Assembly (NCBI GenBank): GCA_002269645.1
Contig: NIVC01004714.1
Location: forward strand, 1 to 37,258
Length of the DNA stretch: 37,258 bases
Direction: 5' to 3'
Source: Macrostomum lignano
Lineage: Eukaryota
Of this stretch, positions 1-36,239 are shown piece after piece; position 1 is the first letter of the stretch, and every line of letters starts with the position of its first letter. The translations under genes were made by a program, and so were the position numbers. Below the pieces are notes generated by a model. It saw only the letters and a program-made list of their open reading frames with translations. It was not told the DNA's origin and searched no databases.

Positions 1-45
1 GTTTCAATGTTGTTCCTATATTTTATACTTCTGATTTTGCAGCAG

Positions 46-2025
46 GTTGCTGAGGAGCTGCTATGCCCGTGTGCTTGGATCCCTACAACGACCCGTATAT
101 GTGTGCATCCATCACCATAGCCTGTGCCGCGAATGCTACAAATGATTGTTTCGACAGCTGGCAGTGACATCCCGCAGTGTCCGCAGTGCCGAGAGAAATT
201 GACCAGACCCGTTGATAATACTCAACTGCGCCGTCTGGTGGAGGCTCACCAACAGCAATCTCAGCAGGCGGTCCAATGCCAGGACTCTTCCTCTGGCGGC
301 ATCTGTGCTCGGCGTAGTGCTGAGCGATGCGGGCACTGCGAGCAGAGCTTCTGCGCGCAGCACTTCATCGCTCATAAAGAGCAGTTTCAAGTGCGTATGA
401 AATTCACTGTTTCTTTATTGTTTTTTAAGGTTCTCGCCTCTGAAGATTAATTTTTAGGTTCTTAAATGCGATCACTGATTTCAGACCGATTGCGTTGAGC
501 TTTTGTCGGCTGCAGATGAAGCAGCTCAGCAGTCAGAGATTCGACAAGAGTGCTAACGAATGGGAAGTCTTTATTCAAAGCTGTGTAGCGCATCTGATTG
601 AGAATTCGAGACTGCAGCGATTAATTCCCGAATCCTGGCTCGACGATGCATCCCGGAGGCACGCCGAAGATTTACGAAGCACCCTCAACGCCGGTGACCT
701 GCGGGCAGCCAGAGTTGCCTATGATGAACTCAGGATGGCCAAAGCGAGATTCGACCAGCAAGGACCGCCTCGCGAGATCGTTGGAGAGCTCAGCCGAGAT
801 GCGTTGTTCTCTCTGTTTCAAGAGAAGCTTTCAGCCCTGCTGAACGAAGCTGAACAGGTGTACCTTGACGGCATCTACGGCTTGGTCGAACGCGTTTGCC
901 ACATTGGAATTTCCACAGTCAAGCTGAAGATTGGGAAAGAGATACAGAAAATTCCGAGCTCAAATGCCGGCTTAGTTTCGTCCTGCCCGGTCGAGGCAGT
1001 CACTTCACTCCCTATGTTGACCTCAAAGCCATTCGTGCCGAGCAATTTGAAAGGGACATTCTGATTCGTTTCGATTTCCAGCAGCAGTTCGACTACAGCA
1101 CCATCAGTATGTCGAACGGTCTGGCCATTTTGGCGCAGTTTCTGCAGAGAGGACCGATTGAACTGCCGTTCTGTCTTCAGATGAAGTTTAAGGAGAGGCT
1201 GGCCTCCGGGGTGGCTGAAAATACCTACTGCAGCAGAATGTATCAACTCGCAGCTTTGCTGCCACTGGCGGAGGCGATCAGTCGTGGGGAGAGCATCGAA
1301 AACGTGGAGTGTCCTTGTGAGCTTCTGAATAATGTACACTTTAAATTACCTTTGTCTACTGAGTCATGACCCTGTTAATTAAACTACAAAAGCTTTTAGT
1401 GTAAAATGCACCAAAAACTCGCGAAACTAACTTTTCTGGTTTCTTAGAAAATATTTGGATTCTGGGCTTGCGCAAAAAATGCAATGCTGTCATGCTGAAA
1501 TAGGAAATAGCTTCTCTTCAACACAAATGATAATAATATTAGTTTTTGTAGAAGCAGATTGATAGTAAACTTTTCTGCTGGTTAGATCAGAGGTATTTGG
1601 AAAGAGTACTTAATTGTTCAAAATCAATAGTTTTTTGCTTTATGAACTAATTAGATAGAAATTGACTTTTACAACTGTAATGCGCATACAAAATCAAGGA
1701 TTTACAGAAGTTGCCCTGTCTGTCTAATGAGTGTCTGACTGGTGGAAATTAACGTTGAAAACGTGAGCTCCTAGCTCGACCGTAAAGACCAGCTGACGCA
1801 GTGCAATTAGCCAGTCGTCGTTGAGCCAGCTCCGGCTTCTTCTGAGATTGAATCTCCAAGAACCAGCCTTAATTGGTCTTTCCCGCAGTGCTGGATGAAA
1901 ATGAGGCACCTCGCGGATGTGTCACGGTGTCCACCAACCTGCCGTGTCTGCTGAACCAAGTCTACCGGGAGCTGCCGGCTGAGGAGCAAAGCGAAGTTGA
2001 ATTGAGGCTTCGAGGAGAAGAGTAA
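46..2025 (+). CDS. TRIM-like protein: RING, B-box, helical region, C-terminal RPGR1_C-type C2 domain. Exons ~46-390, 516-1316, 1889-2025; ~428 aa after repairing four 1-nt deletions. Start not visible in the window.
   Basis: Across frames the RING reads VAEELLC[P]VCLDPYNDPYMC..HHHSLCREC..K MIVSTAGSDIPQCPQCRE. The B-box-like motif is C..CARRSAERCGHCEQSFCAQHFIAH. Splice sites: caa|gtgcgt (390), ctgcag|atg (516), phase-1 cct t|gtgagc (1316), cgcag|tg (1889). The C2 segment KCRLSFVLPG..FDFQQQFDYS..LAEAISRGESIENVECP plus the last exon GCVTVSTNLPCLL aligns with the RPGRIP1L C-terminal C2 in this window. Confidence 0.72.
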
Positions 2026-3222
2026 TTTCGTTTGTCCGAAGTCAAAATATGGTAAAATTGAAAGGTTGATTAGTTCGCTAACGATGAAAACTGGAAACTA
2101 TGGCGTTGTCTGAACAGATTTTAAAAAACTTTTTTGAACAGTAATTGTTTCTTCAAATATTACTCCAGTGGCTGTCTACATGTATATTTAAACAACTTCA
2201 TACAATACTATCGCCGTAGTATTTCTGTTCTGACCTCAGTTGGTGCCTCAAAAGGCGTGACTACGCACTTCTTTCAAGCTCAGGAAGCAGGAAAATATTG
2301 GATTGCTATTAACTTTTCGCAAAAAACTTTTTGTCAATTTTTATAGAAAATATTGGAAGAGATTATTTAGCTAGCCAGGAGTTTTACACATGATTCTTTT
2401 TGTCAAGAGTACGAGCGAATTATTCACTGTGCTCGTATTGTGTTTTAGATATTCTATTTATTCTAGAAAGTTTTTTAGGGTGGTTTGTAGCTCGTAGGTT
2501 TGAACGCACTCATCTTGACGTCGTCCGTTTTTACATTTCATCATCAGCATCTTTCAGAGTCGTGTGGTGAGGAAAACACACGCTTAGTTGCCTATTTAAG
2601 GCATAAAATGATTTCTTTTCGAGTCATTGTATAATTATAACTTTAAACCAACTGGTTAATTAAGCGTCTTTTTCAATTGTTTGTCTCCAATTGTCGCCGT
2701 ATTCACGCTCGTATTTAACTAAATGGAACGTATTACGAGCTAAAAAGCATATATATTTTGAATTATCGAAGTGCGTATTTTTTTAGCCTCAAAACTTATT
2801 AATCATGTGAAGAACAGTTTAGTTTCATAAAACGCTTTTTGGGGTACACGCGATAGTAGAATTATTATACTGTGTAACCTTACAATCAATGATATATACA
2901 CGCTCAAAAAATCGCTTATTTTTAAGCAAAACAAAGAGTTCTTATTAAAAATTATCCATAAAACTTTGTTTAAGTTACTTACGGGGATAAGGCACGTATA
3001 GGCACTTTATCAGATACCTCGTGCAGAATCAAACAGCTTAAAAGTTAAAGGCTGCATTATTCGACTCGAACTCACATGCAAACTAATCACAGACAAATAA
3101 AACAAGAGATATAAAGTGAAAATCGATATGAATCCAGTATAATATGGAATTAAAAGTCAGGTGGTGAGTCACCTTTTGAGAGATGAAAGCATAAAATTAA
3201 GTCTTTCAGACTCAAAAAAATA

Positions 3223-4227
3223 TCACTGCATTCCATACTCACTTTTAACGTGATGAAGCAGCCGTGGCAGGCTGGTTTCAATCGCGATGCTGCCAATCTT
3301 CTTCTCGTTTTGAATGACTGAAATGAAAACGTTGATTGAATCTGGGGTGATTAACAGTAAAATACATTTTTTCTTTGTTGGATTGTGTTTTAAATGGTGT
3401 TTTAGAAATCGAACAAACTCGGAGAAGAAGTATAGCTCGTAGATCTATTTTTACCGTTACAGAAAATATAAAAACTGACACTCTGCGGAACCTTTGTGAG
3501 AATTCTATTCATCGGTTGATTTTTTATAATTCGGCTAAAGTAACTTGGTCACTCATTTAGTTGTCAATATATGATCCACTACACAAAACTTTAATGCCTT
3601 ATAAAAGACCCACGAAACATTTCAAACGTCTGTAGACCCCACGTCGATGTACGTCGCAGGCAATTGGGTATTTTGACGTTAAGCCGAAGGACAATGACAT
3701 CATGCGTAGGTCAGAATTCGATGTAATGTATTAAATGTATCAAATCTGCCCCCAACATAGATGGACGTCGAAAACGTCTGCTGACCTAAATGACTTCAAA
3801 TTGCAGACGGGAGAGAGAAATCTCTAAATCTCACGTGGAAACTCGTTCCAGATGCAGCGGTCCTGTTCGATACTGGGTTGCAGGCCGACACTGGCCTCGC
3901 ACAAGTCGCCGGCTGCCTCAGAAGCCAGCGTGAATCGAAGCTCGACTGGATCAGCCAGTAGCAAGCTGGTTAGCTGCTTCCTCATTCCTTCTTCTGAGTA
4001 ATCGAAGCGCCATATATAGTCGAAGTTTAGGCGATAATCTCCAGGCTGAGACCACCCGGGTCTGGGGATGAGCACGCTGGGCGTGTGCGTATCCTCAGAG
4101 TCGGAATAGCCAGGTAGATTGAAGTAAACATAGCAGTTGTTAAGTTTGGGATTTTTCAAGGCCTCACTGTTCTCCATTAGATGCACAGTTGATATGGCGA
4201 TGTCGCAGTGCCTCGAAACACTTTTCA
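3223..4227 (-). other. C2 module 5 (4227-3835 + terminal exon 3317-3223)
   Basis: RHCDIAISTVHL..FNLPGY..PRPG..FDYS..NEFP | LIQNEKKIGSIAIETSLPRLLHHVKSEYGMQ*. Confidence 0.78.
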
Positions 4228-7200
4228 CTGTGAATGGTTTTTGTGTTTATGCTTTTTCTAGAATTTGAAGCGTTTACAAGCGTTAAAAGTCGAAAATACT
4301 TACTCCTATAATTCAGATGACTTCTGATGCTGATAGGTACAAATCTAAGTAGAGATTTTGGTAGCTCACGGCCGATCTCCAGTAGCAAGCTGGGCAAATC
4401 CGTGCTGATTTTGATGCTGCCCACCTGCTCGGTCCTCGCCATTACTAAAAGTTTTTGATAAAATTCATTACAAAATCCGAAATTCATATTTACCGTATAC
4501 GCTTAACCAAGAAAAAAGCAAGTTTACACGCACCAGGAAATCTCTCGTCTCTAACATCTACATGTACTTCACGTCTTAAGTAATCATCGAGTTTTATGAT
4601 AGTCCTTCCCAATTCAGTCTTAACGAAAGAGCTTGCCAAGTTTGGTGATTTGCAAAATACTTTGAACGCGATCTGCAGGTTTCCCTCGAGAATCGACTTG
4701 GCCAGCATCAGGCGGTTTTGGTAGTTGCCTGTCATGCTGTAGTCGTAAGTCTTTTCAAAATTGAAAGCAAGAAGGAACCCGTTTTTCGGAGATTGCACCG
4801 AATTCAGGACTGGTCTCAAAAGAGACGTCATTGTTTCTTGAAGCTTGAAGCCGACTAGGTCAAATGCTACGTAGCACTTTCCCTTGCCAAGCTGTGAATT
4901 TGTCAAGACTTCAGATGAGCCGTTCAGTTGCACGTCAGCTATTCGCACAGTGCAGTTCTCAACGAAGGCTTCATCGATTTGCGAATAGGCTGATTATTAC
5001 CTGTAATCGAAAGGTACATGTCTGTCGTATCTATGGGAATGCATAGTTGTAAATATGAAGCCTCATTTATTTAATAGTTAAAAATACAAGGATAGTTCGA
5101 CATTGTCTCACCCTCGGCTTCATTTTCCTCAGCAGTAGGTTTTTGGACGTCCTCAAACGAGTCTAACCGTTTCCTGATCGAAATTAGCAGACTCGGCAGG
5201 CTCATGCTGATTTTGATGCTGCCAACTTTATTACCGTTTGACAGTACTAAAGTTACAAAGCGATACATTTTAATGCGACAACAATTCGGACACTATCAGC
5301 ATGTGATGCTAAAAGCCATCTAGCTTTTTACCAGACAGTATACATTTTTTTAAACTCTTGAAACTTGACTGAAACCTGCATTGCTTGCATACGAGTACTA
5401 AGAACTCATATTAATATACGACCAATGCCATCATATCACACTGGGACTACTGAAATAAAGGGTAAACCACCGTTGGACTAACAGGGAAAGCCACCCACTG
5501 TCTATCTACCGATCTAAAAAAACTCACGTGGAAAGCTTTGTTTTCGAATATCCTCGCCTCGAGCAACAAACTCGTCCATTTTGACAGTCGCCTTGCCAAG
5601 ATCCATGTAGAATTCACTCTCTGAGTCGGACGGCTCGCAAGCTACCACGAACGGAATCTCGATGCACTTTCGTCTTAAAAGCAGCATAGTTAATATTTTT
5701 CTCTTGCTTGCGCTGCTGTAGTCGTAGACTCCTTGGAAATTGTAGCTGAGGCAGAACTCCTCAGGTCGCGACCGGCCCGGCCTGGGCGTCGGCACAGATC
5801 CGGGCGTTTCCGTCTCCTCGCTTCGGAAACCGGGTAGCGAGAAGAGCACGGAGCACTTGGTGTTGTCGAGTTCTGGCTTCCTCAAAACATCGCTTGTTTC
5901 ACTGAGCTCCACATTGAATATCTGGACTTTACAGCTTTCCATAGTGAATGAAACTAAACCTAGTAGCTTTTTTAAGTCGTTCTAATTCTGTCTGGCATCA
6001 TTTAAATAGCAAGTTCGCAAACTGCAACTTCAGCTGAACTTTGGAATCTAAGAGGGAAGGTGAAGTTCTTAGGTAAAAATTGTCCACCTTAATGAACTCC
6101 CACTTTCTCTGAGTAATTTGGGCTCTGGAATAATATTAGCAAAAAATGAAGTCAGAGATCTTCTACGTGCTGCAAAAGCCAATCTTCCTTTGTGCGAAAG
6201 AGAGTTAGAAATTGTCAGAAAAGTGGATGCGCTGCACACATCTTTGAGTACGTCATTGTGCATAATAAAATGGCAGCACTAAAATTAGCAGCTTACCCAA
6301 ATGAAGTTCGCTTGATATTTTCTATTTATCTACCAAAATATAAAAATAAAAACGCTGAAACAATATCTAATTCATAATATAATCAGAATATAATTCTGAA
6401 TTAGAAATAAAAACAAAAATTGCAAACTTATTCACTAAGAATCTACGATACACACACCGTAAAACATAACAAACGAGATTCTCTATAGATGTACATGTTA
6501 GTACAGAAAATTTAATTTAGAAATAACCTGATGCATCAGTTACACAACCAATGAGCATATGCTTACATGTAAAGTTGAGCAAAATGTTAGTAGCATGTAC
6601 AGCTGATTCTAACGAGCGCACTGGTTTGATTATAGCTCTCATAACTTTTTTAGCAGAATTTCAAACCACTTGGGCACTTTGAAATTGATAAGCTTTCTAG
6701 CTCTTTAAAAAAGTTATTGACTTTTTTTTACCCTCTGGTATTTCATCGCAGATTTCCCGCAGCAGACTGGGCAAGTTGGTGCTAATCGTGATGCTGCCAA
6801 CAACTTCATCTCCGTTCAGTACTGAAATAATAAAAAACGGCGTGTCTGGTGAACGACGCGTCTACTCGACATGTCCACTCAAAGCCCATTCTACTGAATT
6901 TTAAGCACGCACAAACATGAAAACAATCATAAACTCATCAACTCAATCATGAAATTATCAACTCAATCATGATATCATCAACTCAATCATGATATCATCA
7001 ACTCAATTATGAATCATCAACTCAATTATGAGATCATCAACTCAATTATGAATCATCAATGTAATCATGAGATCATCAACGCAATCAATAAATCATCAAC
7101 TCAATCCATAAAATCAACAACTCATTTTTGAAATATTCAACTCAATCATGAGATCATCAACGCAATCGTGAAATCATCAGCTCAATCAATGAATCATCGA

Positions 7201-8537
7201 CTCGATCATGAACTCCTGAACTCATGAATTTGATTATCATCAAAAGCGTGGATCATTCAAAATTAAGACCACAAAAGAACATCAAAAGTTAGCTAGGATA
7301 AAAAATCAAAGCGAATAAACTAATTAATTAACATGTCTTGAAAAAACCTACACGGAAAGCTCTCGTCTTGAATGTCCTTGCCATCAGACACACGATCTTC
7401 GAGCTTGACGACCGCAGTGCCAAAATCCAAGAAGAACTCGCTGTCCTGATCCTCCGCCTCGCACACCAAGGTGAACGGAAGCTTAACTGGACTCGCCATT
7501 AACAGAGTGGCAAGCTGGATCCGCTTATTGTAATTTGTATCGTAGCTGTAGTCAAATCTCTTCTGGAAGTTAAACCTAAGATGGAAATCTTTTGCCTTGG
7601 TCCAGCCTGGTCTTGGCGTTGGTAGCGAGAGAGAAGTCTCCGTTTCGTCCATATCAAAACCAGGTAGATCAAAGGACACAAAGCTGTTGGTGTTGTCGAG
7701 CTCGGGATTCTGTAGAGCTCGGCAAGATTGCTCTAGCTGGACACTCGATATACAAACTGTACACATCTCGCGCGAGTCTGCTTTAGAAGTCGACTGAGTC
7801 TTCCGACTGAGTGCTGAAGTTTGTTTCAGGTTTCAAACTCTTATTGAGAGTGTCTTTACGAGAAAATGACGAATAAATACAGAGTAAAATGGCAACAATA
7901 AAGCTTAAATTCTCACAGTCTTTAATATGATCATCGGCAGCTGGATTCGTTTCTATGCAAACGGCGAGCAGTAAGCTGGGCATACTTGTGCTCAGCTTTA
8001 TCGTGCCAACTTGCTCTTTGTAGTAGGAAAGCACTAAAATATAAAACATCCGATTGATAGTAGTTAAGGAACTGATTTCAATTGATTACCTACCGGTATT
8101 TTAAAAATATAACATTCTCAACCCGCACCAGGAAAGCTTTCCTTTTGGACGTCGTCCTTTCGAGCAATTCTATTATCGAGTCTGACAACGGCTCGGCCCA
8201 GATTAACTTCACTTTGCGATTCGTCCGGTAGGCAAATCAGGGTAAAATTGACATCAGCATGATACCGGCTGAGCATGTCATCCAGAGCCTGTCGCTTGCC
8301 TCTGCTGGAATAGTCGTATGAACTTTCGTAATCGAATTTCAGGACCAGATCCTGGCGTGTGGACGCTCCTGGTTTTCGGGTCGGCAGGATGGCGGGGGTC
8401 CTGGTGGCCTCCAGCTTATAGCTTGGCAGATCGAAAAGCACGTAGAACTTCGAACTTCTCAGATTCAATCCTGCCAAATCAGGGCAAGTCTGGTCGAGCC
8501 GGACGCTGAATATTTTCACCACGCAGCTTGATTCCAT
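3223..8537 (-). CDS. Predicted ~909-aa protein of five tandem RPGR1_C-type C2 domains. Exons 8537-8129, 8033-7917, ~7813-7352, 6821-6732, ~5959-5528, 5246-5112, 4989-4534, 4444-4304, 4227-3835, 3317-3223.
   Basis: Five homologous ORFs share C.V.I..V.L, LPG, TPRPG, F...YDYS, PF..vCE and FP motifs. Each is followed by a small exon with VGsIkIS..LPSLL. All nine introns are GT-AG and phase 1, and the exon sum (2730 nt) is an open frame. Acceptors at 7813 and 5959 are less certain. Confidence 0.7.
4304..4989 (-). other. C2 module 4 (4989-4534 + 4444-4304)
   Basis: ENCTVRIADVQL..FDLVGF..FNFEKTYDYS..ERFP | VMARTEQVGSIKISTDLPSLL. Confidence 0.78.
5112..5959 (-). other. C2 module 3 (~5959-5528 + 5246-5112)
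   Basis: MESCKVQIFNV..LPGF..TPRPG..EFCLSYNFQGVYDYS..QSFP | LLSNGNKVGSIKISMSLPSLL. Confidence 0.82.
6732..7813 (-). other. C2 module 2 (~7813-7352 + 6821-6732)
   Basis: MCTVCISSVQL..FDLPGF..TPRPG..FDYS..ESFP | LLNGDEVVGSITISTNLPSLL. Confidence 0.8.
6925..7230. repeat. Degenerate ~19-20 bp minisatellite (ATCATCAACTCAATCATGA[G/A/T]), ~15 units, in the intron splitting C2 module 2
   Basis: Tandem units read directly from the sequence. Confidence 0.9.
7917..8537 (-). other. C2 module 1 (large exon 8537-8129 + small exon 8033-7917)
   Basis: MESSCVVKIFSVRL..FDLPSY..YDYS..ESFP | VLSYYKEQVGTIKLSTSMPSLL; gccATGg start context. Confidence 0.8.
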
Positions 8538-10579
8538 GGCTCCGCTGTAAAATCCGCATAAAATCCATGTAAAATTCAGATATTATTAGTTTGATAAGAG
8601 AGTTCTCGCTGTTTCTAGAAAATTAAAGAACCTTTTTTTCCAGAATGTTCTGAATTACTGATTGACTGAATTACTGAATAAATTTGTTTGAATTACTGAA
8701 TAACTTTGTTGTTATACTCGTGAAATCTCAGTTTGTTGAAATGAAGAAAAAACAGCGAGAACTTTCTTATCAACCGAATATAATTATTATCAGTTGCTCT
8801 TTCTGCAAGCTTACCCAAATTGATGGTTCTTTGCTATCAAGACTTGCAGTCAATATAATCGTACTTGCATATATGATTACGAACTTATACACTGCTACAG
8901 AGGTATTCTGAAACTTTTTCTGCATTGTGTTGGCTTTTTAGCGAGAGACAGTTTGCATTTTGAAAGACTCACAATTCGTTCGGATGGATGGACGTATGTA
9001 CGAGTGAGCGCTCAGAAAGACTTACTCATGCATGATATGTGAGAGAACCATTTAATTTCGACAAATCTTACACTATTCATCAGTGGTCTATTGTACGAGT
9101 ACATTAAACTGCCTGCCAACTCTCTCAACTTAGCTCTTATTGTGGAGTATGTGCGTACTCAGCATCCACATCTAGTCTGTCTGAGGTTTGCGTCCACTTT
9201 TTACAAAGCATTCTTTTATTAAAATGCGTCTAAACAGTCTCTAAGCGTAGCTTTCTGTATGCTAGAAAGACTACTGCACTCGTACATCCGTTTTAGTAAG
9301 TTACATGTATTTTTAATTTTTCTCAAAAATAGTGCATCAAACCTCTAAAGGACAGTTAATTGCTCGCTTTCTTATTTGAAAGTACAACAGGCGAAATATT
9401 ATAAATTTTGTCTTATAAGCTTTCCATCTCCCTAATGAGAAATCCTCGAACGAACTTTTAAACTGCATCCTTTAGATATCCATAAAAACTTTCTCAAATT
9501 TGATTCCCACGTACACCGCCTTTCTGACAAAATACTTAGATTGTACTATGGTAAATAATAAATAAAAGTCCATTCGTGCCAATGCTGCAATTCCACTTGC
9601 ATTGTTCAAAAACAGGTCTTTTGAAAGAGATTTTCTTACCATGTTATACTCAGAATCTAAAAGTATTTTTGCATATACTGCATTTAGGACTGTATGGTAT
9701 TGAATGATGGGTCTTTGATCGAACCAAAAAGTCTGAATTTAGAGCAAACCTTATTTCTTAGTTTTTGAATTTGCTCGTATATTTTCTATCCGATATTTCG
9801 TGTCAGCTGATGGAGAATCTTTCATAACTCTAAATAACTTAACCAAATAAGCATTATTAGAAGAGGATATAGTTAAAATTAGATTTAAAATTTTCTCAGA
9901 TCGACAACCGGCACATCTTAGGCGCATAACCCTTAGAAAAGCGTTTATTTCGCTTTTGAGTTACAAAGCAATTTTTAACTTAACTTTATCCCTGCTCGTC
10001 GCAATCGCGCTAAAGTAGTTACGCTCGTAGAAGTAAAAATATCAAATATTCAAGTCGGTAAAGTACGAGACGCAGCATCTGTGATAGAAGATAGACAGGT
10101 TTTTTTCAACATTTTTGTAGAAAATCACAGCGAGAAAGCGAAAGATCAGGCGTCGAAATAATAAATAAAATAGTTCTTAAGAGTACGAGCGTATTCCTTT
10201 ACATAAACGTGGTGCGAGGTTTCTGAGAGTGCATGTTTACTCTTACAGAAATACCGAAAAGAGACAGTTCGTCTAAATTCTACCACAAAGTACCTTAACC
10301 GAAACGGGAACGAACCAGAAACTATTAGCAAGACACTCCAGGTGCCGATATTACCAAGCTACCATAACTAGCCATAAATCTAAAAAACTAGAAAATACGT
10401 AACACCATTTAGCTTCAAAACATGACACGTGCCAGACGTTATTATAACGTACAACAAAATCGCAGTGTACTATGATGAGAATCGCATAAAGGTAATAAAA
10501 TATCTGCAGGTTTTTTACAAAATCCATTATACTAAAATCAAGTCTAAAATGTCTTTAACAGCCAGAAGACAGAGCAGGA

Positions 10580-11560
10580 TTAGTTAACGAATCTGACGGC
10601 AGACTTTTTCGCGTCCGGGAGTTCGTTGTAGACCTCCAGTAGCAGGCTCGGCAGGTTCATGCTGATTTTGATGCTGCCCACTTGTTCATCGTTCAGCATT
10701 ACTAAAATTGTTAGAAGACACATGGCATGATTAATGTGAGGTTTGGATTAGTCAAACTTTTTTATTTACCAAATATTGAAAAAAATATAATTACATATTA
10801 CTACTAATGATAATAATTGATTAAACCTGCCCAAAGGGTATTACGTGGCGCATCTGAAGGCTGCGTACGGCTGTTCAGTCCAAGGACTGGGGGGTCGCCA
10901 GATAGCCTCAATTACCCCAGCTAATGCTGGCACCCATTTTACAGCTGGGTGAACTGAAGCAATGCAGAGTTAAGTGTCTTGCTCAACGACACAAATTGTT
11001 CTGAGAGGGTCCAAAATCAAACAACCGACCTTTCAGTCGCTTGTCCAACGCTCTGTAACCACTAAGGCTACAACAAGTATTTGTGAAAGTGTATTTCAAA
11101 TAATCCTACTCGAGTTTTCACCCGAGTCAACTGGAACTCACGAGGAAAGATCTCTTCTCGAATGTCCTCGCCTTGAGCGATTCGATCGTCCAAATTGACC
11201 ATCGTTTTGCCCAGATCCACGAAAAATTCGCTCTCTGGATCAGACGGCTCGCACACCACAGTAAACGGGATCTCAATACTCTTCTGTCCCAATAGCAGCA
11301 TCGCCAGTACTTTGCGCTTCTCGTAGCTGCCGGCGAAACTGTAGTCGTAGACTCTCTGAAAGTTGTAACTGAGGCAGAACTCATTGGGTCGGGACTGGCC
11401 GGGCCTGGGCGTCCAGAGAGACACTGGCGTCTCCGTCTCCTCCTGCGAGAAGCCAGGCAAGAGGAAGAACACGTAGCACTTGGTGTCATCGAGGTCGGGA
11501 TTTCTTAAAGCCTGGCAGGTCTCGCTAAATTGCACGTTGAATATCTGGACTGTGCAGGCT
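10580..11560 (-). other. RPGRIP1L: Native C-terminal (RPGR1_C-type) C2 domain of RPGRIP1L; likely parent of the six derived copies
   Basis: MEACTVQIFNV..EEIFP | LMLNDEQVGSIKISMNLPSLLLEVYNELPDAKKSAVRFVN*, with the same phase-1 intron as the copies. Confidence 0.85.
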
Positions 11561-14500
11561 TCCATTGAAGCACGACCAGTAGCTGTCAGCATCAGCTGCT
11601 GGCGGAGCTCGTCCCCGTGGCTACTCTCCGTCACCACGCCATCGGATTCCTCCGCCTCCGGTGCCGGACGCTCTGTGTCCTCGTAGTCGTCCTCATACTC
11701 AACCTCCTCCACTTCGTCTTCCGGTTCCGCCTCGGCAACGTCGTAATCGTCGTCTCGCAGACTGACGGACTGCAGATGCGAAGCGACGCCGCTTCTACCA
11801 ACGCTTGGACCTGAAGAATTCGTGGAGTTTAGAATTCGCTTGGAGCTTGGAACTATTGGTTTAGTCTTTATCTTCTGCAACCTGCTTATTCGTTTTTTAG
11901 ACAAGCCCTGGGTCAGGGTCATTGACAATGCCGAACTCACCTAACGATGTATTTCTCACGTCCTGCGTATCCGTGATGCTAGTTACGCTGTCGGTGACGG
12001 ATGCTAAAGTGATGAAACCAGTTAGGAAAATTTTAGCAGCCTTGTTTTAGCCAGAAATAGTACTAACAGTAGGTTGATTAAACATGCATAGGCCTACCAT
12101 CCATGAGGGTGCTGACCCGAGTCTGGCTCGCCTGCGTATCGCCAGCGCCACCGCTGCCGCCGATGCCAAGCCGACGCTCTGCCGCGGCAGCGGCTAAAGC
12201 AGCGGCCGACGGCGCGTGCCGTTTCGGCGGTTGCGGCGTCTGAGACACCTGCGGCTGAATTTGGAGTTGGGATTCAAAAATACAGCTAGCTAAAAAATAA
12301 ACTTCAGTAAATTTTTTATTATCTTATCAACACTACCAACCTGATTGTCCCCAGTCAGAGATCCCGACCGACTGCCAGTTCGTGCACTCGGTCGTGGCGA
12401 CGACGATCCCGACGCTGAATTCGGTGCTACAGCCGACGCTGTTGGCGATGGACCATGGCTGCTTCCGCTGGCACTTCCTGTGCCTCGGCGCGGGGTTCTC
12501 GGCTGCTGAACTGGCTGTGGCTGCGGCTGCTGGGGCTGAGGTCGCTGCTGCGTGCTTCTCGCTGATCCGGTGTCGGATCCCAAGGCCACCGCCGCGCTGC
12601 GATCAAGAGTAGAGTCATACCCAGGTTCCCGACGGTGCTTCAACTGCGGCTTGTCTCTCAGCAGTTCAGCTTCGCCAGTCATCAGTGGCAGAGGCTCGGC
12701 AGGTCCGTCCCAATGACCAGCTGGATTGTACGCAAACTGCCAGCTGAGCTCAAGCTCCAGAGTGCCGTTCGGCTGCTGATCAGCTCCGAGTAGTTGGTAG
12801 ATGCCCTGCACAGCCCGGTTCTGGCTTAAGGACACTAGATCGATCTACATGGGGATACGAGTAGATAGGGGATTAGTAATGGGGTAAATCGGTAAGAATA
12901 AGAATCTTTTGGGTCTTGAATATGCGAGAAATATGAAAAGTTCAGCCATGGCTGTTAAAACGTGTCTAAATCCTTATTGAAAACAATGAATGACATCCAA
13001 GTCACCTTAGCAACGCCTAGGTAGGCGCTTTCAAGAGGATCGTCTTCGTCCAGCACCCAGACGACGAGCTTCTGCGTCTTCAAATAGCGATCCAACTCTG
13101 GGGTCGGCGTCAGAGTCAGCTGCTGGTAGAATTGGAACTCTGGATCGCTCGAGTTTGGGATGGCGGGCGAAACAGTGTCCTCACAGTCGAAGAACTTGTA
13201 GGAGCAGTACGGCGTCGGCTGGAAGTCCGGTCGGCGAGCTTTCAAGCCTCGACAGCGGACGATCTTCACGCCCAGAGTGTTGGCACCGCCGGCTGCGCGA
13301 CGATTCTGCGCCAGGTCGTCGAGAGCTTTCAGGCCCTCCGCGGCCGCTTGGTGATTGGCGGACATGTAGCCAGAGCCTTGGCGCGCTCCCGGTAGAGCCG
13401 CATCGCCTGCTCCATGGGCACCCGCATCCGCATCCAGTAGTCCAGGCAGCCCACCACCGTGCCTCCGTCCACCGACACCAGCTGAGCTCGGCCGGACACC
13501 GGGGCGGTCGGTTTCGAGTCGAGCAGCTCGCGGAAGTAAAGTCGACAAGCGGCCACTTGATGATAAGTGACGCCTACTGAGTGGTAGAGCTCCAGCCGTG
13601 CCTGTTGTGGGGCAGATTACGCTTCCAGTAGAATACGAGCAGAGAGAGTCTAAATGTATTTCCGATGAGTTTTTACTAAACAAGTTTCCGAAAATTAAAG
13701 GGGCTCATCAAGCGGTGGTTCGGCGGTGAAGGTAATTCTGTCCACTTCGCTGACTTCTGAGCACATCAAAGCTACAAGCGCGCCAATACTGTACGCAGGC
13801 ACGCACTCATACACGTACGCTCACACAGGATGTACAGCGGCCTTGACTTTCTAAGGCATGTACACTCTCTGTGCTTTGGGGGGTTGGTTCTCATTGGTGT
13901 GAATTGCACGACAACCCACGGGAAAATTTTCGAGCACACAAGCCCCAAATGGATGTCGCCACGCACGGAAGCAAACCAGGGGTTGAGTCGCAGGAGTCAG
14001 CAGCGTTTCCCTCTGAGCTACTATGCTTCTTAATCCGCTTAGTATCACAAAGAGCTGATCAAATGACCAACAACACGTGTACATTACCTTTTCCTTGTTT
14101 ATGTAGTGCAGGAACGAATCGTCAACCTTCACCACGTACTGCACGGTCTTGTTGAACTCGGCCACTCCGCCAGCTGCGCGCAGCACATCGGTGGTCTGCA
14201 ACTCGCACACATAGAACGGCCAGGTGCAAAACAGGGACGGATTCGAGTCGCCACCGAGCAGCTGGATTCCTTCATCTGTCAGGGTTAGACGGCCAACGTG
14301 CAGCTCGACGAGATTTTCGCCGTTTTGCAGGTGCACAGTTTCGTCGATTTCGTCCACTCCGTCGGCCTCTTCGCTTTGAAGCTGGTTTTGCTGGTCGAGC
14401 AGAGCGAATTGCTTGGTGCCTGCAATGATAGCCCGGGGTGTCAAATAAGCTGTGCTGAACTACAGAAACGTCTTTTTCGATTGAGCATTAACGTCTGTTG

Positions 14501-25550: not shown

Positions 25551-28500
25551 TCAGTAGTAAGTCTCCCGTTCAACAACATTCCCGGGAGACAGTCGACGAA
25601 GCAGAAGTTTCCTAATCTCGTCGAAGATAAAGATTAGGCTGCTGTGGCCGAGCGGCAGGAAGCACCAGACGAATTTCAGCGGCATCATTTTGAGCACCAT
25701 GTAGGAGTAGGGCACGTAACTCAGCAACATAGCTAAGATGGTCTCGAAGAACAAGCTGCCGGTCATGGGATGATTTCGCATGCCTGGAATTGAAAACATG
25801 TGCTTCTCTAGATGTACAGTACAGTTGGTTGCGTGACTCAGGTTTAACTTCATTTTCTATTCATTTCCGGAACCTGATGTGGCCTTAATTATTAATTTAG
25901 CAATGAAATTAGAAGCAATTTTGATGGTTAAAATTAGGAGAGGGAGAATCTGACTGGAAAAGTCAAGCTCTGCATCAGCTTATGAATGTACATGTGTAGG
26001 CATTGTAGGCGATAATTTCTGCGTTACAGGTGGACAGACTCAGTGTTACAGGTGACAGACTCAGTGTTACAGGTGACAGACTCAGTGTTACAGGTGACAG
26101 ACTCAGTGTTACAGGTGACAGACTCAGTGTTACAGGTGACAGACCCAGTGTTACTGGGGACTGTCTCCCTGATTACCTTATCTACATGTGCTTATACTGT
26201 ATCAGTGTTACAATTATTTGCTTCGTTGGTAGATTGGGATGATATACAATTAATTATTCTTGTTACAGATGGTTGGTTGCCTTTGTGATGTTGTCAGCGT
26301 CTCGGTAGAATCTTTCTACGAGCTATAAGAAGATAACAACACACTGGAAGCATATAAAATGACTTTCCCGTTGGCTGAGAAAGTGATTAAGGTGCATATT
26401 CATAGGCCCCAGTTTCCCATAATGATACGAAACTCATTGAAGCGATAAACACGTTAATGGATTTTCGGTTGCTTTGGCAATAATCTTCTTTGGGCGCGCT
26501 GGTTTGATGCTTCTCTGATCTTTCCGGCTGCTCATGGCATAGCAGATGATCGCATGATGCGTGTATATCGCACTTTGCTCAGCTGATCATGTATGATTGA
26601 TTGGATTGACGGGAAATTCTGCCTCAATGGCACTGACGCTATAGCATGTTTTACAAATTCTATAGTAGGAATTCTCTTGTGTACTCGTATTATTAATCTA
26701 TTTTGCAGACTTTATGTGTATTTGGATTTGTAGTTATTAATTCTGCAGTTAATATTTGAGTTTGCAGTCATCACTGAGGATTCTGTGCAGTCATCATGCA
26801 CTGAGGATTCTGTGCAGTCATCACTGAGGATTCTGTGCAGTCATCATGCACTGAGGATTCTGTGCAGTCATCACTGAGGATTCTGTGCAGTCATCACTGA
26901 GGATTCTGTGCAGTCATTCTCGTGCTCAATATTCTGAAAACTTACCCTGCTGGAAGACGGACAATCGCCTGGTCTTGCAGATGACTAAATCCGCCCATTG
27001 CACAATCACGATGGCAATAAAGAAGCCGGTCTGACAGGACATTTCCAGTTTTTTACGCTCGTTGTAGGTCCATTCCTGACCGAATGAGTCCTCCAGACTG
27101 TCCTCCGTACGGTTGTCCCAAGGCTCGCGCAAGAAGAACAGCCTCCTGGGTAGGAAGCCATTGTGAGCCATGATGCAGAAGTACACCAGCCAGCCTGCGG
27201 CAGCCTGCAGCATCCCAATCTGCCCGTAGGCCATGCCGATCAACCGACCATTGACCAGCCGGTCCCGACTGGGGTTCCTCGGCGCCCGGCTCATGATGTC
27301 GTTCTCGGCCGATTCGTAAGCGAAGCTGATCGCAGGGAACATGTCTGTGCCGAGGTCGATGCACAGGATGTGCACCGTGCCCAGGGCCAGCGGCAGGCCC
27401 AGCACAATGAAGAATATGAATGGCACCATCTCTGGCACCTTCGAGGTGAGCGTGTACGCGATCGACTTCTTCAGATTGTCGAATATGAGACGGCCTGGGA
27501 ATTTTTTGCGGATAGCAGTTGGAAGCGAAATTGAAGTTTTTGACATCCAAAAATGGGGGCTTCTAATTCTAGAATGAATTCTTTGATGCCATTTTTGACA
27601 ACCAAATATCCTTGATTTGGAAGTTTCTGACACCCAGACTGAGGCTTGCATTCATTGCATTCCCAACCAAGCAACGCAGCGTGATCTACTCTCCCAAAAA
27701 AACGTCTCGATTTCGGTTCATCGAGCTGGCCTCTCATCCAGTTAAGCCAGTCAACTCAACTGAGCAGCTTTCGTGCCCCACCCCCCAAGAATTCAATCTC
27801 TCTGGATTGGATAAAGACAAGCGCCTCCCCAAGCTGAGTTGAGACCGACCGACCATAGGAAAGTCCGACGGCGAGGCTGTTTTATGCAATCGAATTGCGA
27901 GAGCCGTCGCTAGAGAGGGGGACTTTTTCAATCGGGAAAACTCTCATTTCTTCCCGGCGACCACTGCCTCTGCCCCGAGCTGCGTAAATCTTACTAAATA
28001 ACCGTCAGATGCAAATTTTTACTTTTGAGATTAAATTGACTGGCTGGGCTCGGTTGGGAGCTGGGAAATATGAGCTATTCGAGAGCTCGAATATGACCGT
28101 GCCTTGATGATTTTGTGGACGTTAAATAAGATGAAATTACCCGAAGGATGTGGCAATTTAAGGTTCATCTGAAATCCTAACCGGAGCTAAATGACTGCAC
28201 TAACTCTAGTCTCATAAACTCCATCTCTAATCTTCCCGGAATTCTCTTAGAATATCTCACTTACGACCTCACCTTCTTCAACTCCAACAACAATGGAAGC
28301 GAAATTGTCATCCAGCAGTATCATGTCCGCCGCCTGCTTGCTCACGTCGCTCCCAGTGATGCCCATAGCAACGCCAATGTCCGCCTTCTTCAAAGCCGGC
28401 GAATCGTTCACTCCGTCCCCAGTCACCGCCACAATATTGCCCAGCTTTTGAAATGCTTCAACAATGATGAGCTTCTGCTGCGGACTGGTCCTGGCGAACA

Positions 28501-31500
28501 CTATCTCCCGGTGTTGGCGAATGATTTCAACCAGCTCGTCCGCTGACATGTCCTTGAGCTGGCCGCCGTTCACTACTCGGGCCTCGGCTTCGGCCGGGTT
28601 CACCGATTCTACGGGAACTCCGCGCTCTTTGGCCAGCGACTCGGGCGTCCGGCTGTTCGGCGAGATGATACCGACACCTCGGGCGATGGCCGCCGCCGTG
28701 ATTGGATGGTCGCCGGTAACCATGACTACCTGTTTTTAGTAACAGTGGACAGTTAGGCTTTGCTTGCAAGCGTTAGGTTAAAAACAGCCCAGCAACAGCC
28801 TAGCAACAGCCTAGCAAAAAACTAACAACAGTCTAGCAACAGCCTAGCAACAACCTGACAACAGCCTAGCAACAACCTAAAAACAGCCTAGCAGCAAACT
28901 AACAACAGCCTAGCAACAGCCTAGCAAAAAACTAACAACAGGCTAGCAGCAACCTAACAACAGTCTAGCAACAGCCTAGCAACAACCTAACAACAGCCTA
29001 GCAACAATCTAACAACAGCCTAGAAACAGCCTAGCAAACCTAACAACCTCCTAGCAACAGCCTAGCAACAGCCCAGCAGCAGCCTAGCAACAGCCTAGCA
29101 ACAACCTGACAACAGCCTAGCAACAACCTAAAAACAGCCTAGCAGCAAACTAACAACAGCCTAGCAACATCCTAGCAAAAAACTAACAACAGGCTAGCAG
29201 CAACCTAACAACAGTCTAGCAACAGCCTAGCAACAACAACAGCCTAGCAACAACCTAACAACAGCCTAGAAACAGCCTAGCAAACCTAACAACCTCCTAG
29301 CAACAGCCTAGCAACAGCCCAGCAGCAGCCTAGCAACAGCCTAGCAACAAACTAACAACAGGCTAGCAGAAACCTAACAACAGTCTAGCAACAGCCTAGC
29401 AACAACCTAACAATAGCCTAACAACAACCTAACAACAGCCTAGCAACAGCCCAGCAACAGCCTAGCAACAAACTAATAGTATCCCTGGATTTTACACATT
29501 TTTCTCCTTGGCATTATCTCACCTTATTGATCTCCAAAAGTTAGCAAGGAATTTTGAAAAGCTAAAGCTACCTGTGCCTGAAATTAGCTTAAACAATTAA
29601 CAAACCCTCCAAAACCAAATGTGATTTAAAAAATGAGGAAGAAGCGCAGCGCACCCGGATCCCGGCGCTCCGGCATTTCTCCACCGCGTACGGCACGGCA
29701 GCTCGTGGCGGATCGATCATGCTCATCAGGCCGACAAAGCGATAGCCGGTGAGTGGAAAGTTCACCGTCTCAGTATTGTACTTGTAGTTGTCGGGATAAT
29801 CCTTGGCAGGTAGTCGAAAGTCGCAGAAGCCGAGCACTCGCTCCCCGAGGCTGCCCAAGTTTTCGTAGGCGTCCTGAAATTTTTTCTTCCACTTGGCGTC
29901 CAGAGCGACCTCGGCGCCGTCAACGAGAATGCTCGAGCAGCGGTCCAGAATCCGCTCCGGAGCGCCCTTCATCACGCACAGGTGGCGAGCTTCGCCGTCC
30001 ATTTGAACAGTTCTGTGCACAGAAACCTGCATGTGCGTACGACGAGTTTTGAATGTTTAAATCACTCGGCACGGGGTAAAATGGAAAACTTTTGTATTGG
30101 TCAGACTGGAAATCTCAGTTGGAACAATTGAATGTTACTGGGGTCATTGGAATGTAACTGGGGTCAATGAAATGTTACTGGGGTTATTGGACTGGTACAG
30201 GGGGTCATTTAAATGGTAAAGGGGTCATTGGAATGGTAAAGGGGTCATTGGAATGGTACAGGGATCATTGGAATGGCAAAAGGGTCATTGGAATGGTACA
30301 GGGGTCATTGGAATGGTTCAGGGTCATTGGAATGGTACAGGGGGTCATTAGAATGGTACAGGGGTCATTGGAATGGTACAGGGGTCATTGGAATGGTACA
30401 GGGGGTCATTGGAATGTTACTGGGGTCATTGGAATAGTACAGGGGGTCATTGGAATGGTAAAGGGGTCATTGGAATGGTAAAGGGGTCATTGGAATGGTA
30501 AAGGGGTCATTGGAATGGTAAAGGGTCATTGGAATGGTACAGGGGGTCATTGGAATGGTAAAGGGGTCATTGGAATGGTAAAGGGTCATTGGAATGGTAC
30601 AGGGGTCATTGGAATGGTTCAGGGGTCATTGGAATGGTACAGGGGGTCATTGGAATGGTACAGGGGTCATTGGAATGGTACAGGGGTCATTGGAATGGTA
30701 CAGGGGGTCATTGGAATGTTACTGGGGTCATTGGAATAGTACAGGGGGTCATTGGAATGGTAAAGGGGTCGTTGGAATGTTACTGGGGTCATTGGAATGG
30801 TAAAGGGTCATTGGAATGGTACAGGGGTCATTGGAATGGTACAGGGGTCATTGGAATGGTAAAGGGGTCATTGGAATGGTACAGGGGTCATTGGAATGGT
30901 ACAGGGGGTCATTGGAATGGTACAGGGGGTCATTGGAATGGTAAAGGGTCATTGGCATGGTACAGGGGTCATAGGAATGGTACAGGGGGTCATTGGAATG
31001 GTACAGGGGGTCATTTGAATGTTACTAGGGTCATTGGAATGGTACAGGGGGTCATTGGAATGTTACTGGGTTATTGGAATGGTAAAGGGGTCATTGGAAT
31101 GGTAAAGGTCATTGGCATGGTACAGGGGTCATTAGAATGGTACAGGGGTCATTGAAATGGTACAGGGGGTCATTTGAATGTTATTGGGGTCATTCGAATG
31201 GTACAGGGGTCGTTGGAATGTTACTGGGGTCATTGGAATGGTAAAGGGTCATTGGAATGGTACAGGGGTCATTGTAATGGTACAGGGGGTCATTGGAATG
31301 GTACAGGGGTCATTGGAATAGTACAGGGGGTCATTGGAATGGTAAAGGGGTCATTGGAATGGTAAAGGGTCATTGGCATGGTACAGGGGTCATTGGAATG
31401 ATACAGGGGGTCATTGGAATGTTACTGGGGTCATTGGAATGGTACAGGGGTCATTGGAATGGTGTCGGGTCAGAAAAATAGCAACATGGTCATTCCATAG

Positions 31501-35637: not shown

Positions 35638-36239
35638 ATTCTTTTAAATATTCAGGAGATTTGATGTGTCGCAATTTCAGAGCTGAGTCTGGAGTCTGGC
35701 TTGTTGAATTGAAACCCGGGTAAGTTGACGACTTGCTTCATAAATGCCTCAATGCCATAGACTAAAGCTCACGAGATAATTAAAGAATGTACTAATGTTC
35801 CATTCGGTTTTGAAGAATTGAATGATTTTTAAAAGTACATATTGGCTTTGACTTCGCAGTACTTACTTTTAAATACACGCAAACCCCAGCCTTAGCACAC
35901 TAATTCGTGTAATTATTACTTGCGACGAACTGCATCGATTCGTTGGTTCGTTACTAAATTGAGTTGATTCAATACTCTCAGCATTCCTCTCCCTCCAACT
36001 GCTCTGCTTCAGTCTGTTCTCAGATTAAGTGAGGCCGAGATCGGTAAATCAGTCCATTTCGATTAGTTTTAGCAGCCATGAAGAAGCGAAAAGAATCCAG
36101 TTGCGGCGTCTGCATGAAAATCCATAGTTATTGAGTACCAAGGCATGTTTCATGGTTTAAAATAGGAAATGTTTTGACTGCAATTTTTAATGCGCTTGTA
36201 GATTGCGCTTCTATCTCAGCGTGTTCTGCTGCAATTGTG

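What the first reader, a model, noticed from the sequence alone, without database searches (positions are those of the whole stretch)
46..2025. Chimeric TRIM-like E3 ligase whose C-terminal domain is the RPGRIP1L C2 domain
Seen: a RING, a B-box and a helical region run in one frame (after 1-nt repairs) into a C2 domain homologous to the RPGRIP1L C-terminal C2 ~9 kb away. It keeps the same phase-1 intron before the last beta-strand exon (CP|LLDENEAPRGCVTVSTNLPCLL vs FP|LMLNDEQVGSIKISMNLPSLL), which points to a DNA-level inverted local duplication. Known: TRIM C-termini are usually PRY-SPRY, NHL, FN3, PHD-BROMO, MATH, ARF or filamin, and I know of no TRIM with an RPGR1_C domain. Inference: a lineage-specific ligase that may ubiquitinate ciliary transition-zone partners (RPGR-like or NPHP4-type) or be targeted there.
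Basis: partly seen in the sequence, partly recalled or inferred. Interest (0 to 1): 0.78.

Follow-up and report, generated by a model that had tools for sequence, protein, structure and literature searches.

The report
Flatworm RING ligase with ciliary C2 domain
This is a real, apparently intact gene of the flatworm Macrostomum lignano that joins a TRIM-type RING ubiquitin-ligase module to a copy of the RPGR-binding C2 domain of the neighbouring cilia gene RPGRIP1L; the frameshifts in this window are almost certainly assembly errors, and the combination is unusual but limited to this lineage.

Summary
Window 46-2025 (+) carries three exons (46-390, 485-1316, 1889-2025). After six 1-nt repairs they encode residues 8-446 of UniProt A0A1I8GNY8 (Macrostomum lignano, "RING-type domain-containing protein") with no amino-acid difference.

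All six lesions are single bases missing from short homopolymers in the first 957 nt. A 97.5%-identical copy, present on two contigs of the Mlig_3_7 assembly, is intact and annotated (dN/dS 0.29). So this is not a pseudogene.

- **N-terminus:** a TRIM-type RING (family profile vs TRIM21, E 2e-10; Foldseek TRIM21/TRIM25 RING, TM 0.8), then a conserved Cys/His finger that looks like B-box1 but fails Pfam and PDB profile tests. There is no B-box2. About 145 helical residues follow.
- **C-terminus:** an RPGR-interacting (RPGR1_C) type C2 domain. hhalign against the local copies gives E 9e-18, and the top Foldseek hit is 4QAM_B. Pfam itself misses it.
- **Intron:** the phase-1 intron is shared with all local copies.

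New context:
- Five further RID units lie between this gene and RPGRIP1L.
- RING-family paralogues lie just upstream.
- A second, about 26%-identical RING-RID paralogue sits on another contig.

The fusion is therefore old and maintained. Ligase activity and ciliary targets remain inference.

The parts
1..45 (+). 3' end of the intron that precedes the RING exon. The first coding exon (MNDFGSE) lies outside the window.
   Evidence: P0001/P0158 start with MNDFGSE, which is absent from the window. The window start aligns to L002 position 10516, inside the first intron.
46..390 (+). Exon with the RING (nt 64-189) and the conserved Cys/His B-box1-like finger (nt 277-375). It carries three 1-nt assembly deletions near 70, 96 and 140.
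391..484 (+). Intron (phase 0, after ...KEQFQ). The position is shared with paralogue P0155 (...LLFQ|AEFES).
485..890 (+). First part of the large exon, encoding the helical (coiled-coil-like) region, residues about 124-258. It carries two 1-nt deletions near 548 and 559.
   Evidence: helices 112-170, 178-193, 196-216, 228-255.
891..1316 (+). Rest of the same exon, encoding the main body of the RID/RPGR1_C-type C2 domain (residues about 260-401). It has one 1-nt deletion near 957 and ends one base after the Pro codon (phase 1).
1317..1888 (+). Phase-1 intron at the position conserved in all RID units.
1889..2025 (+). Last exon, encoding the final beta-strand and helix of the RID domain (LLDENEAPRGCVTVSTNLPCLL...) plus the stop codon.
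3225..5981 (-). Context: RID units U3, U2 and U1. Large exons are 5517-5981, 4493-4993 and 3827-4246. Small exons start at 5246, 4444 and 3317. The array runs tail to tail with the candidate.
   Evidence: The units are conserved in L002/L003.
6699..8582 (-). Context: RID units U5 and U4, which together form a two-RID gene (UniProt A0A1I8J8Y7/A0A1I8GPY1; a 370-aa gene is called at the same place in L002/L003).
10582..11559 (-). Context: terminal RID domain of the RPGRIP1L-like gene. The large exon ends at about 11142 and the small exon is 10582-10701.

Best explanation
The region is most of a functional, transcribed Macrostomum lignano gene (UniProt A0A1I8GNY8; near-identical GenBank PAA67346.1/PAA87951.1). 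The six frameshifts in this window are base-calling or assembly deletions and not decay.

The protein is a TRIM-like RING E3 ligase with four parts:
- An N-terminal TRIM21/TRIM25-type RING with flanking helices. It keeps all eight zinc ligands, the CPxC hydrophobic and proline E2-contact positions, and the Arg 'linchpin' after the last Cys. Inferred role: it binds and activates a ubiquitin-charged E2.
- A B-box1-like zinc finger.
- A helical region of about 145 residues. Inferred role: it dimerises the protein as in TRIMs.
- In place of the usual PRY-SPRY or similar module, a divergent RPGR-interacting-domain (RID) type II C2 domain.

The RID domain was captured, with its phase-1 intron, from the adjacent RPGRIP1L/RID tandem array. 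It was joined to the last gene of an adjacent RING-family cluster.

In RPGRIP1 and RPGRIP1L the RID is a protein-binding module that holds the RCC1-like propeller of RPGR and binds neither Ca2+ nor lipid. By analogy, the RID here is most likely the substrate- or partner-recognition domain. It would direct ubiquitination to an RPGR-like or other RID ligand.

**Shown:** architecture, homology, gene structure, conservation, intactness in other assemblies.

**Inferred:** ligase activity, dimerisation, identity of the ligand.
For: **Intactness**
- P0001 matches all 439 window codons once six 1-nt gaps are filled.
- Against the intact copy in L002/L003, the CDS differs by exactly those six gaps plus 14 substitutions (7 synonymous, 7 non-synonymous). 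dN/dS is 0.29, Fisher p 0.023.
- The RPGRIP1L-like gene in the same window has a similar GGG>GG lesion near 13368.
- The GenBank gene models of Mlig_3_7 come from a genome-guided transcriptome assembly (PMC5730564). A transcript-based model therefore joins the RING exon to the C2 exons.

**RING**
- The family profile hits the TRIM21 RING at E 2.3e-10, then TRIM34/31/5/30/32.
- The AF2 model has pLDDT 83-98 for residues 10-160.
- Foldseek top hits are the TRIM21, TRIM25 and TRIM69 RINGs, TM 0.74-0.84, rmsd 1.5-3.1.
- The zinc ligands are invariant in six paralogues.
- The best hits outside Macrostomum are amphibian RING-B-box-CC-PRY/SPRY TRIMs, E 1e-21 to 1e-11, covering residues 7-233.

**RID**
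- hhalign E 9e-18.
- phmmer hit to an RPGR1_C protein at E 1.2e-10.
- AF2 C-terminal domain pLDDT 75-93.
- Foldseek top hit 4QAM_B, the RPGRIP1 RID, at E 1.6e-6.
- The local RID profile against 4QAM_B gives E 3.7e-11.
- The phase-1 intron is shared.

**Maintenance**
- A second RING-RID paralogue (P0004/P0155/P0156) has the same exon structure on another contig.

**RID function**
- PMC4519163 and PMC4466403.
Against: - Pfam gives only sub-threshold RING hits for this protein (22.4 bits against a cut-off of 27). It gives no zf-B_box, TRIM_CC or PF18111 hit.
- The finger-only profile finds nothing in the PDB.
- Foldseek did not return any B-box or TRIM coiled-coil structure.
- The RID is only 21-33% identical to the neighbouring copies. 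Its RPGR-contact residues could not be checked, so its ligand may have changed.
- No expression data, reads or biochemical data were available here.
- About 925 codons of the Na/K-ATPase gene in the same window show no frameshift. The errors are therefore local to some stretches and not general.
Confidence: 0.72

Rival explanations
1. The window copy is a genuine, recently inactivated pseudogene of a multi-copy gene. The six frameshifts are real mutations in this homeologue or allele, while other copies stay intact.
For: - The window is a distinct copy, about 2.5% diverged from the two annotated Mlig_3_7 copies.
- M. lignano carries large duplicated blocks (PMC5730564).
- The Na/K-ATPase coding sequence in the same window has no frameshift, so the assembly is not uniformly poor.
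Against: - UniProt A0A1I8GNY8 carries all seven residues that distinguish the window copy from the other copy, and it is intact. The same allele therefore exists without the deletions.
- All six lesions are 1-nt deletions in short homopolymers, four of them CGG>CG. That is an error signature.
- There are no stop codons or larger indels, and dN/dS is 0.29.
- The RPGRIP1L-like gene shows the same kind of lesion.
Confidence: 0.08
2. The protein is real, but the RID domain serves to localise it and not to select its substrate. It would dock onto the RPGRIP1L partner at the ciliary transition zone, or compete with RPGRIP1L for it. The RING-finger-helix part would then act on other nearby proteins or only as a scaffold.
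For: - RID domains are docking modules in transition-zone complexes.
- The locus also encodes RID-only proteins with two RIDs and perhaps three. These can only bind or compete.
- Several close RING-family paralogues lack any RID, so the N-terminal module works without it.
Against: - Nothing here separates localisation from substrate selection.
- In characterised TRIMs the C-terminal domain usually does both (established knowledge of TRIM21/TRIM5/TRIM25).
- The catalytic features of the RING are retained.
Confidence: 0.15
3. The architecture is an annotation artefact: two neighbouring genes (a RING gene and a RID gene) merged by gene prediction.
For: Some M. lignano models are obviously fused or garbled. 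Examples are the 806-aa P0002 and the EIRLRN stretch in P0157.
Against: - The helical region and the body of the RID domain lie in one uninterrupted exon (485-1316), with no intron or stop between them.
- The same holds for the paralogue, in one exon of L001 (10912-11682).
- The same holds for the intact copies in L002/L003.
Confidence: 0.03

Closest known systems
TRIM (tripartite motif) E3 ligases with dimeric RINGs, e.g. TRIM21, TRIM25, TRIM69, and fish/amphibian RING-B-box1-B-box2-CC-PRY/SPRY TRIMs
   Same: - N-terminal C3HC4 RING with flanking helices, giving the best sequence and structure matches.
- A following Cys/His finger that aligns to their B-box1-type finger.
- A long helical region, then a C-terminal beta-sandwich binding domain.
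- The same order of modules.
   Different: - No B-box2, which canonical TRIMs keep when only one B-box is present.
- The finger has C-x8-C in place of the first C-x2-C and fails Pfam and PDB profile tests.
- No TRIM_CC profile match.
- The C-terminal domain is an RPGR1_C/RID C2 domain, which is not among the described TRIM C-terminal domains.
RPGRIP1 / RPGRIP1L C-terminal RPGR-interacting domain (Pfam PF18111; PDB 4QAM chain B)
   Same: - Type II C2 beta-sandwich.
- Full-length profile homology to the neighbouring bona fide copies.
- The same phase-1 intron before the last strand.
- The motifs FDYS and G-S/C-I/V-x-[IV]-S-T-x-LP-x-LL are retained.
   Different: - It stands at the end of a RING protein, not of the CC+C2+C2+RID scaffold.
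- It is too divergent for the Pfam model.
- It carries an insertion of about 10 residues (ERLASGVAENTYC...).
- Its ligand is unknown.
TRIM32 (BBS11) and C2-bearing HECT ligases (NEDD4/ITCH)
   Same: These are functional analogies only: an E3 ligase linked to cilia biology (TRIM32, listed in PMC3495828), and E3 ligases that use a C2 domain for targeting (ITCH C2 appears among the fold hits).
   Different: TRIM32 has NHL repeats and no C2 domain. NEDD4-family ligases are HECT enzymes with lipid/Ca2+-type C2 domains at the N-terminus. There is no homology of architecture.

Membership tests
TRIM / RBCC family | N-terminal RING finger with the full set of zinc ligands | tested here: met
   - Eight ligands are present and invariant in paralogues.
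- Family profile vs TRIM21 RING, E 2.3e-10.
- Foldseek TRIM21/TRIM25/TRIM69 RING, TM 0.74-0.84.
- Caveat: Pfam RING models are sub-threshold for this member but above threshold for paralogue P0003.
TRIM / RBCC family | B-box type 2 zinc finger after the RING | tested here: not met
   - No second finger exists between the first finger (residues 86-118) and the long helix that starts at 112-120.
- In alignments with vertebrate TRIMs, their B-box2 (Pfam hit 137-176 of P0010) faces the helical region of the candidate.
TRIM / RBCC family | Any B-box (type 1) recognisable by profile | tested here: inconclusive
   - The pattern C-x8-C-x7-C-x2-C-x4-C-x2-H-x3-H aligns to the B-box1-like finger of vertebrate TRIMs.
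- AF2 pLDDT for this stretch is 83-95.
- But there is no Pfam zf-B_box or ANCHR-like_BBOX hit, and no PDB hit for the finger-only profile.
TRIM / RBCC family | Coiled coil following the B-box (antiparallel dimer) | tested here: inconclusive
   Helices 112-170, 178-193, 196-216 and 228-255 are predicted. There is no TRIM_CC Pfam hit. Dimerisation could not be modelled with these tools.
RPGR1_C / RID domain (PF18111) | Match to the Pfam model above its gathering score | tested here: not met
   The candidate gets no PF18111 hit even at E<=10. Among the neighbouring units, R, U2, U3, U4 and U5 score above the 22.9-bit cut-off. U1 does not (16.4 bits, E 0.0086).
RPGR1_C / RID domain (PF18111) | Full-length homology to bona fide members | tested here: met
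   - hhalign against the six local RID copies: probability 99%, E 9.1e-18, 170 columns.
- phmmer hit to A0A1I8J8Y7 (an RPGR1_C protein), E 1.2e-10.
- The local profile hits 4QAM_B at E 3.7e-11.
RPGR1_C / RID domain (PF18111) | Type II C2 beta-sandwich fold closest to the RPGRIP1 RID | tested here: met
   In the AF2 model, residues 260-440 have pLDDT about 75-93. Foldseek rank 1 is 4QAM_B (E 1.6e-6, 183 columns of a 180-residue chain), ahead of dysferlin and ITCH C2 domains.
RPGR1_C / RID domain (PF18111) | Binds the RCC1-like domain of RPGR, not Ca2+ or lipid | not testable with these tools
   This is known for RPGRIP1 and RPGRIP1L (PMC4519163). The interface residues were not available, and no protein search was left to look for an M. 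lignano RPGR.

The most novel reading that the evidence does not exclude
In Macrostomum the RPGR-interacting C2 domain has become a free, shuffling binding module bounded by phase-1 introns. One locus holds RPGRIP1L, a two-RID gene, a likely three-RID gene and a RING-RID ligase, and a second RING-RID ligase lies elsewhere. Together they would form a lineage-specific system. RID-only proteins would compete for the RPGRIP1L partner (RPGR-like), and RID-bearing E3 ligases would degrade it. This would tune transition-zone composition in the heavily multiciliated epidermis or in sperm.
Probability: 0.12. Interest if true: 0.7.

Novelty: new variant of a known kind. Interest (0 to 1): 0.45.

Why it matters
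The finding adds a C-terminal recognition domain to the TRIM-like ligase repertoire that has not been described there before: a cilia-type, protein-binding C2 domain. It is also a clean, datable example of exon and domain capture. A RING-family gene cluster abuts a tandem array of RID units, and the fusion gene sits exactly at the boundary.

If the RID still binds an RPGR-like propeller, it gives an experimentally tractable model animal a natural 'degrader' of a ciliary transition-zone partner. M. lignano has transgenesis and RNAi.

There are two practical points.
- Pfam and InterPro miss the domain, so the databases describe the protein only as a RING protein.
- Frameshifts in this assembly should not be read as pseudogenes without checking other copies.

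Tried and rejected
1. **Alternative acceptor at 516.** It would avoid two repairs (KEQFQ|MKQLSS...). I rejected it because P0001, P0158 and all paralogues read ...FQ|T[DE]C..LL... from the acceptor at 485.
2. **Pfam on the repaired protein and on P0001.** Only sub-threshold RING hits appeared, with no B-box, TRIM_CC or PF18111.
3. **Finger-only profile against PDB sequences.** Nothing significant, only a TRAF-type finger at E 9.6.
4. **Candidate RID alone against PDB sequences.** Nothing.
5. **The look-up of encoding contigs for P0001 and P0013.** Neither is on record. The route through cluster member P0158 worked.
6. **Word-indexed homologue searches.** They returned very few proteins, so the spread outside M. 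lignano rests on the one exhaustive HMMER scan.
7. **First AF2 run with a shallow alignment.** The N-terminus was poor. The second run, with 65 sequences, fixed the N-terminus but lost the C-terminus, so the two models were used for different halves.
8. **Foldseek on the second model.** It returned only RING structures, so the B-box and coiled-coil folds remain untested.
9. **Crude acceptor scan for a U3-U2-U1 transcript.** It was not informative.
10. **The Remans et al. 2014 paper** with the RID-RPGR interface residues is not held.
Full report
**Organism and gene**

The window is eukaryotic. A search with the repaired conceptual protein found one protein: UniProt A0A1I8GNY8 of the flatworm Macrostomum lignano (P0001, 446 aa, 'RING-type domain-containing protein').

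A codon-by-codon walk of P0001 along the window gives exons 46-390, 485-1316 and 1889-2025. All 439 codons present in the window match. The only discrepancies are six positions where the window lacks one base: near 70, 96, 140, 548, 559 and 957. The first seven residues (MNDFGSE) are encoded upstream of the window.

An alternative acceptor at 516 would have avoided two repairs. It is contradicted by P0001 and by all paralogues.

**Are the frameshifts real?**

All six are single-base deletions in short homopolymers: CCGG>CCG three times, ACGG>ACG, CC>C and AAA>AA. All lie in the first 957 nt of the window.

A cluster look-up found a second 446-aa protein, P0158 (GenBank PAA67346.1/PAA87951.1), which differs from P0001 at 7 residues. 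Its two loci in assembly GCA_002269645.1 (L002, L003) are about 97.5% identical to the window and show the same gene order.

Within the coding sequence the window differs from L002 by exactly the six gaps plus 14 substitutions. Seven are synonymous and seven are non-synonymous. dN/dS is 0.29, Fisher p 0.023. The window encodes the P0001 residues at all seven diagnostic positions. So the very same allele exists intact in another data set.

The RPGRIP1L-like gene in the window has the same kind of lesion. GGG>GG near 13368 splits ...RERAKAL|GYMS... between the C2-C2_1 and C2 domains.

The Na/K-ATPase gene aligns to pig alpha-1 over about 925 codons without any frameshift. The errors are therefore patchy and not general.

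The M. lignano assemblies are PacBio-based. REAPR rated only 32-64% of their bases as error-free, and ORF intactness of mapped transcripts was used as a quality measure (PMC5730564). The GenBank gene models of that assembly derive from a genome-guided transcriptome assembly (same paper). The P0158 models are therefore indirect evidence for a transcript that joins the RING exon to the C2 exons.

I conclude, with about 0.9 confidence, that the frameshifts are assembly errors.

**N-terminal half**

The exhaustive HMMER scan of 1.84e9 representative proteins found a family of M. lignano proteins. They share residues about 3-250 (P0002-P0007, E 1e-34 to 1e-26). Next came amphibian RING-B-box-CC-PRY/SPRY TRIMs, at E 1e-21 to 1e-11 over residues 7-233.

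In the family alignment, the eight RING ligands and the ligands of a second finger are invariant. The second finger has the pattern C86-x8-C95-x7-C103-x-H105-C106-x4-C111-x2-H114. An Arg or Lys follows the last RING cysteine in every member.

Pfam RING models are sub-threshold for this protein but above threshold for paralogue P0003. A profile of the family hits the TRIM21 RING at E 2.3e-10, followed by TRIM34, TRIM31, TRIM5, TRIM30 and TRIM32. TRIM72 is aligned over 15-190.

With a 65-sequence alignment, AlphaFold2 models residues 10-160 at pLDDT 83-98. The model includes helices on both sides of the RING. Foldseek puts the dimeric RINGs of TRIM21, TRIM25 and TRIM69 on top, at TM 0.74-0.84 and rmsd 1.5-3.1 Å.

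The second finger aligns with the B-box1-like finger that precedes B-box2 in vertebrate TRIMs. It has no Pfam B-box hit, and its own profile finds nothing in the PDB. There is no B-box2. Helices span 112-255.

The protein therefore works like, and probably descends from, a TRIM. It does not pass the B-box2 criterion for membership.

**C-terminal half**

Pfam PF18111 does not detect it. The other evidence is strong:
- The domain aligns over its full length with the six RID copies on the other strand: hhalign probability 99%, E 9.1e-18, tblastn E 4e-7 and 4e-5.
- It hits the RPGR1_C protein A0A1I8J8Y7 at E 1.2e-10 in the exhaustive scan.
- Its AF2 model (pLDDT about 75-93) has the RPGR-interacting domain of human RPGRIP1 (4QAM_B) as best PDB match, E 1.6e-6, ahead of ordinary C2 domains.
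- The local RID profile itself matches 4QAM_B at E 3.7e-11.

Every copy has a phase-1 intron one base after the [F/C]-P codon, before the ...VGSIKIS..LPSLL strand. This holds for the candidate, for the RPGRIP1L terminal domain and for the five extra units. It also holds for the distant paralogue P0155 in L001 (TFK|LEQDKQTFGSIKLS).

**Genomic context and origin**

On the minus strand the window carries an RPGRIP1L-like gene with C2-C2_1, C2 and RPGR1_C domains. Downstream of it lie five extra two-exon RID units, U5 to U1.

U5 and U4 form an annotated two-RID gene: A0A1I8J8Y7/A0A1I8GPY1, and a 370-aa gene called at the same place in L002/L003. The small exons of U5, U3 and U2 carry phase-1 GTGAG donors. 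Those of R, U4 and U1 run into stop codons. This suggests a two-RID gene and a three-RID gene built from symmetric phase-1 modules.

The candidate lies tail to tail with U1, about 1.2 kb away. In L002/L003 two RING-family paralogues lie about 2-8 kb upstream of it on the other strand. One of them is P0007. The fusion gene therefore sits at the boundary between a RING-family cluster and the RID array. That fits capture of an inverted RID unit at DNA level.

The fusion is not recent. The candidate RID is the most divergent local copy, at 21-33% identity. A second RING-RID gene (P0004/P0155/P0156) has the same exon plan. It lies on another contig, and its GenBank accession (PAA54387.1) directly precedes that of RING paralogue P0005 (PAA54388.1), which is on a contig of the same length. 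No RID array lies within 10 kb of it. The two RING-RID C-termini group together in a simple NJ tree, although on long branches.

**Function**

The RID of RPGRIP1 is a type II C2 domain that binds the RCC1-like domain of RPGR and binds neither Ca2+ nor lipid. RPGRIP1L binds RPGR in a similar way (PMC4519163; PMC4466403).

By analogy with TRIMs, the most likely mechanism is as follows:
- The RING recruits the E2.
- The helices dimerise the protein.
- The RID selects the partner.

These three steps are inference.

**Novelty**

The canonical architecture in the literature is CC+C2+C2+RID (PMC3495828). No paper found combines RPGR1_C with a RING or TRIM. In the exhaustive scan, only M. lignano proteins combine the two halves.

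The gene itself is already in UniProt and GenBank as an uncharacterised RING protein. What is new is the recognition of its C-terminal domain and of the local RID expansion.

Noticed in passing
window 3225-8582 (-): Five extra two-exon RPGR1_C (RID) units sit in tandem downstream of RPGRIP1L. U5+U4 form an annotated two-RID gene. The small exons of U5, U3 and U2 have phase-1 GTGAG donors (7916, 5111, 4369/4303), while those of R, U4 and U1 end in stops. This suggests a two-RID and a three-RID gene built from symmetric phase-1 modules.
   Followed up: partly
window ~13360-13375 (-): The RPGRIP1L-like gene has an apparent 1-nt deletion (GGG>GG). It shifts the frame between the end of the C2-C2_1 domain (...RERAKAL) and GYMSANH..., which leads into the central C2 domain. 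It is the same error type as in the candidate.
   Followed up: partly
window 26929-35643 (-): A Na/K-ATPase alpha-subunit gene aligns to pig alpha-1 residues 19-942 with no frameshift. Its introns are filled with tandem repeats: a 20-mer x99 at 30130-32140 with strong GC skew, a 22-mer x38 at 32462-33290, and an 11-mer x63 at 28783-29470.
   Followed up: partly
window 36279-36791: A purine-rich 12-bp tandem repeat (GAGAGGGTGAGG, about 44 copies) gives long spurious ORFs on both strands.
   Followed up: no
window 6924-7224: A 20-bp tandem repeat (15 copies) lies inside the intron between the two exons of RID unit U4. The copies in L002 and L003 differ in length here.
   Followed up: no
L002 2111-7731 and L003 3312-8391 (-): Two RING-finger-helix family paralogues lie head to head just upstream of the RING-RID gene in the Mlig_3_7 copies. 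One is P0007, and the other is an unannotated-looking one 42-48% identical in the RING exon. This region is outside the window.
   Followed up: partly
P0157 (A0A1I8GPY1) vs window 8127-8537: The ML2-based model of the two-RID gene has a garbled stretch (LVLEIRLRNRGKRQ) where the window reads LVLKFDYESSYDYSSRGKRQ. The other assembly therefore has its own indel errors. P0002 (806 aa) looks like a fused model of two family members.
   Followed up: no
window vs L002/L003: L002 and L003 (two contigs of one assembly) differ from the window at exactly the same positions across the part aligned base by base (window 1-2100). The window is a third copy, about 2.5% diverged. This is consistent with the known hidden polyploidy and redundancy of M. 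lignano assemblies.
   Followed up: partly
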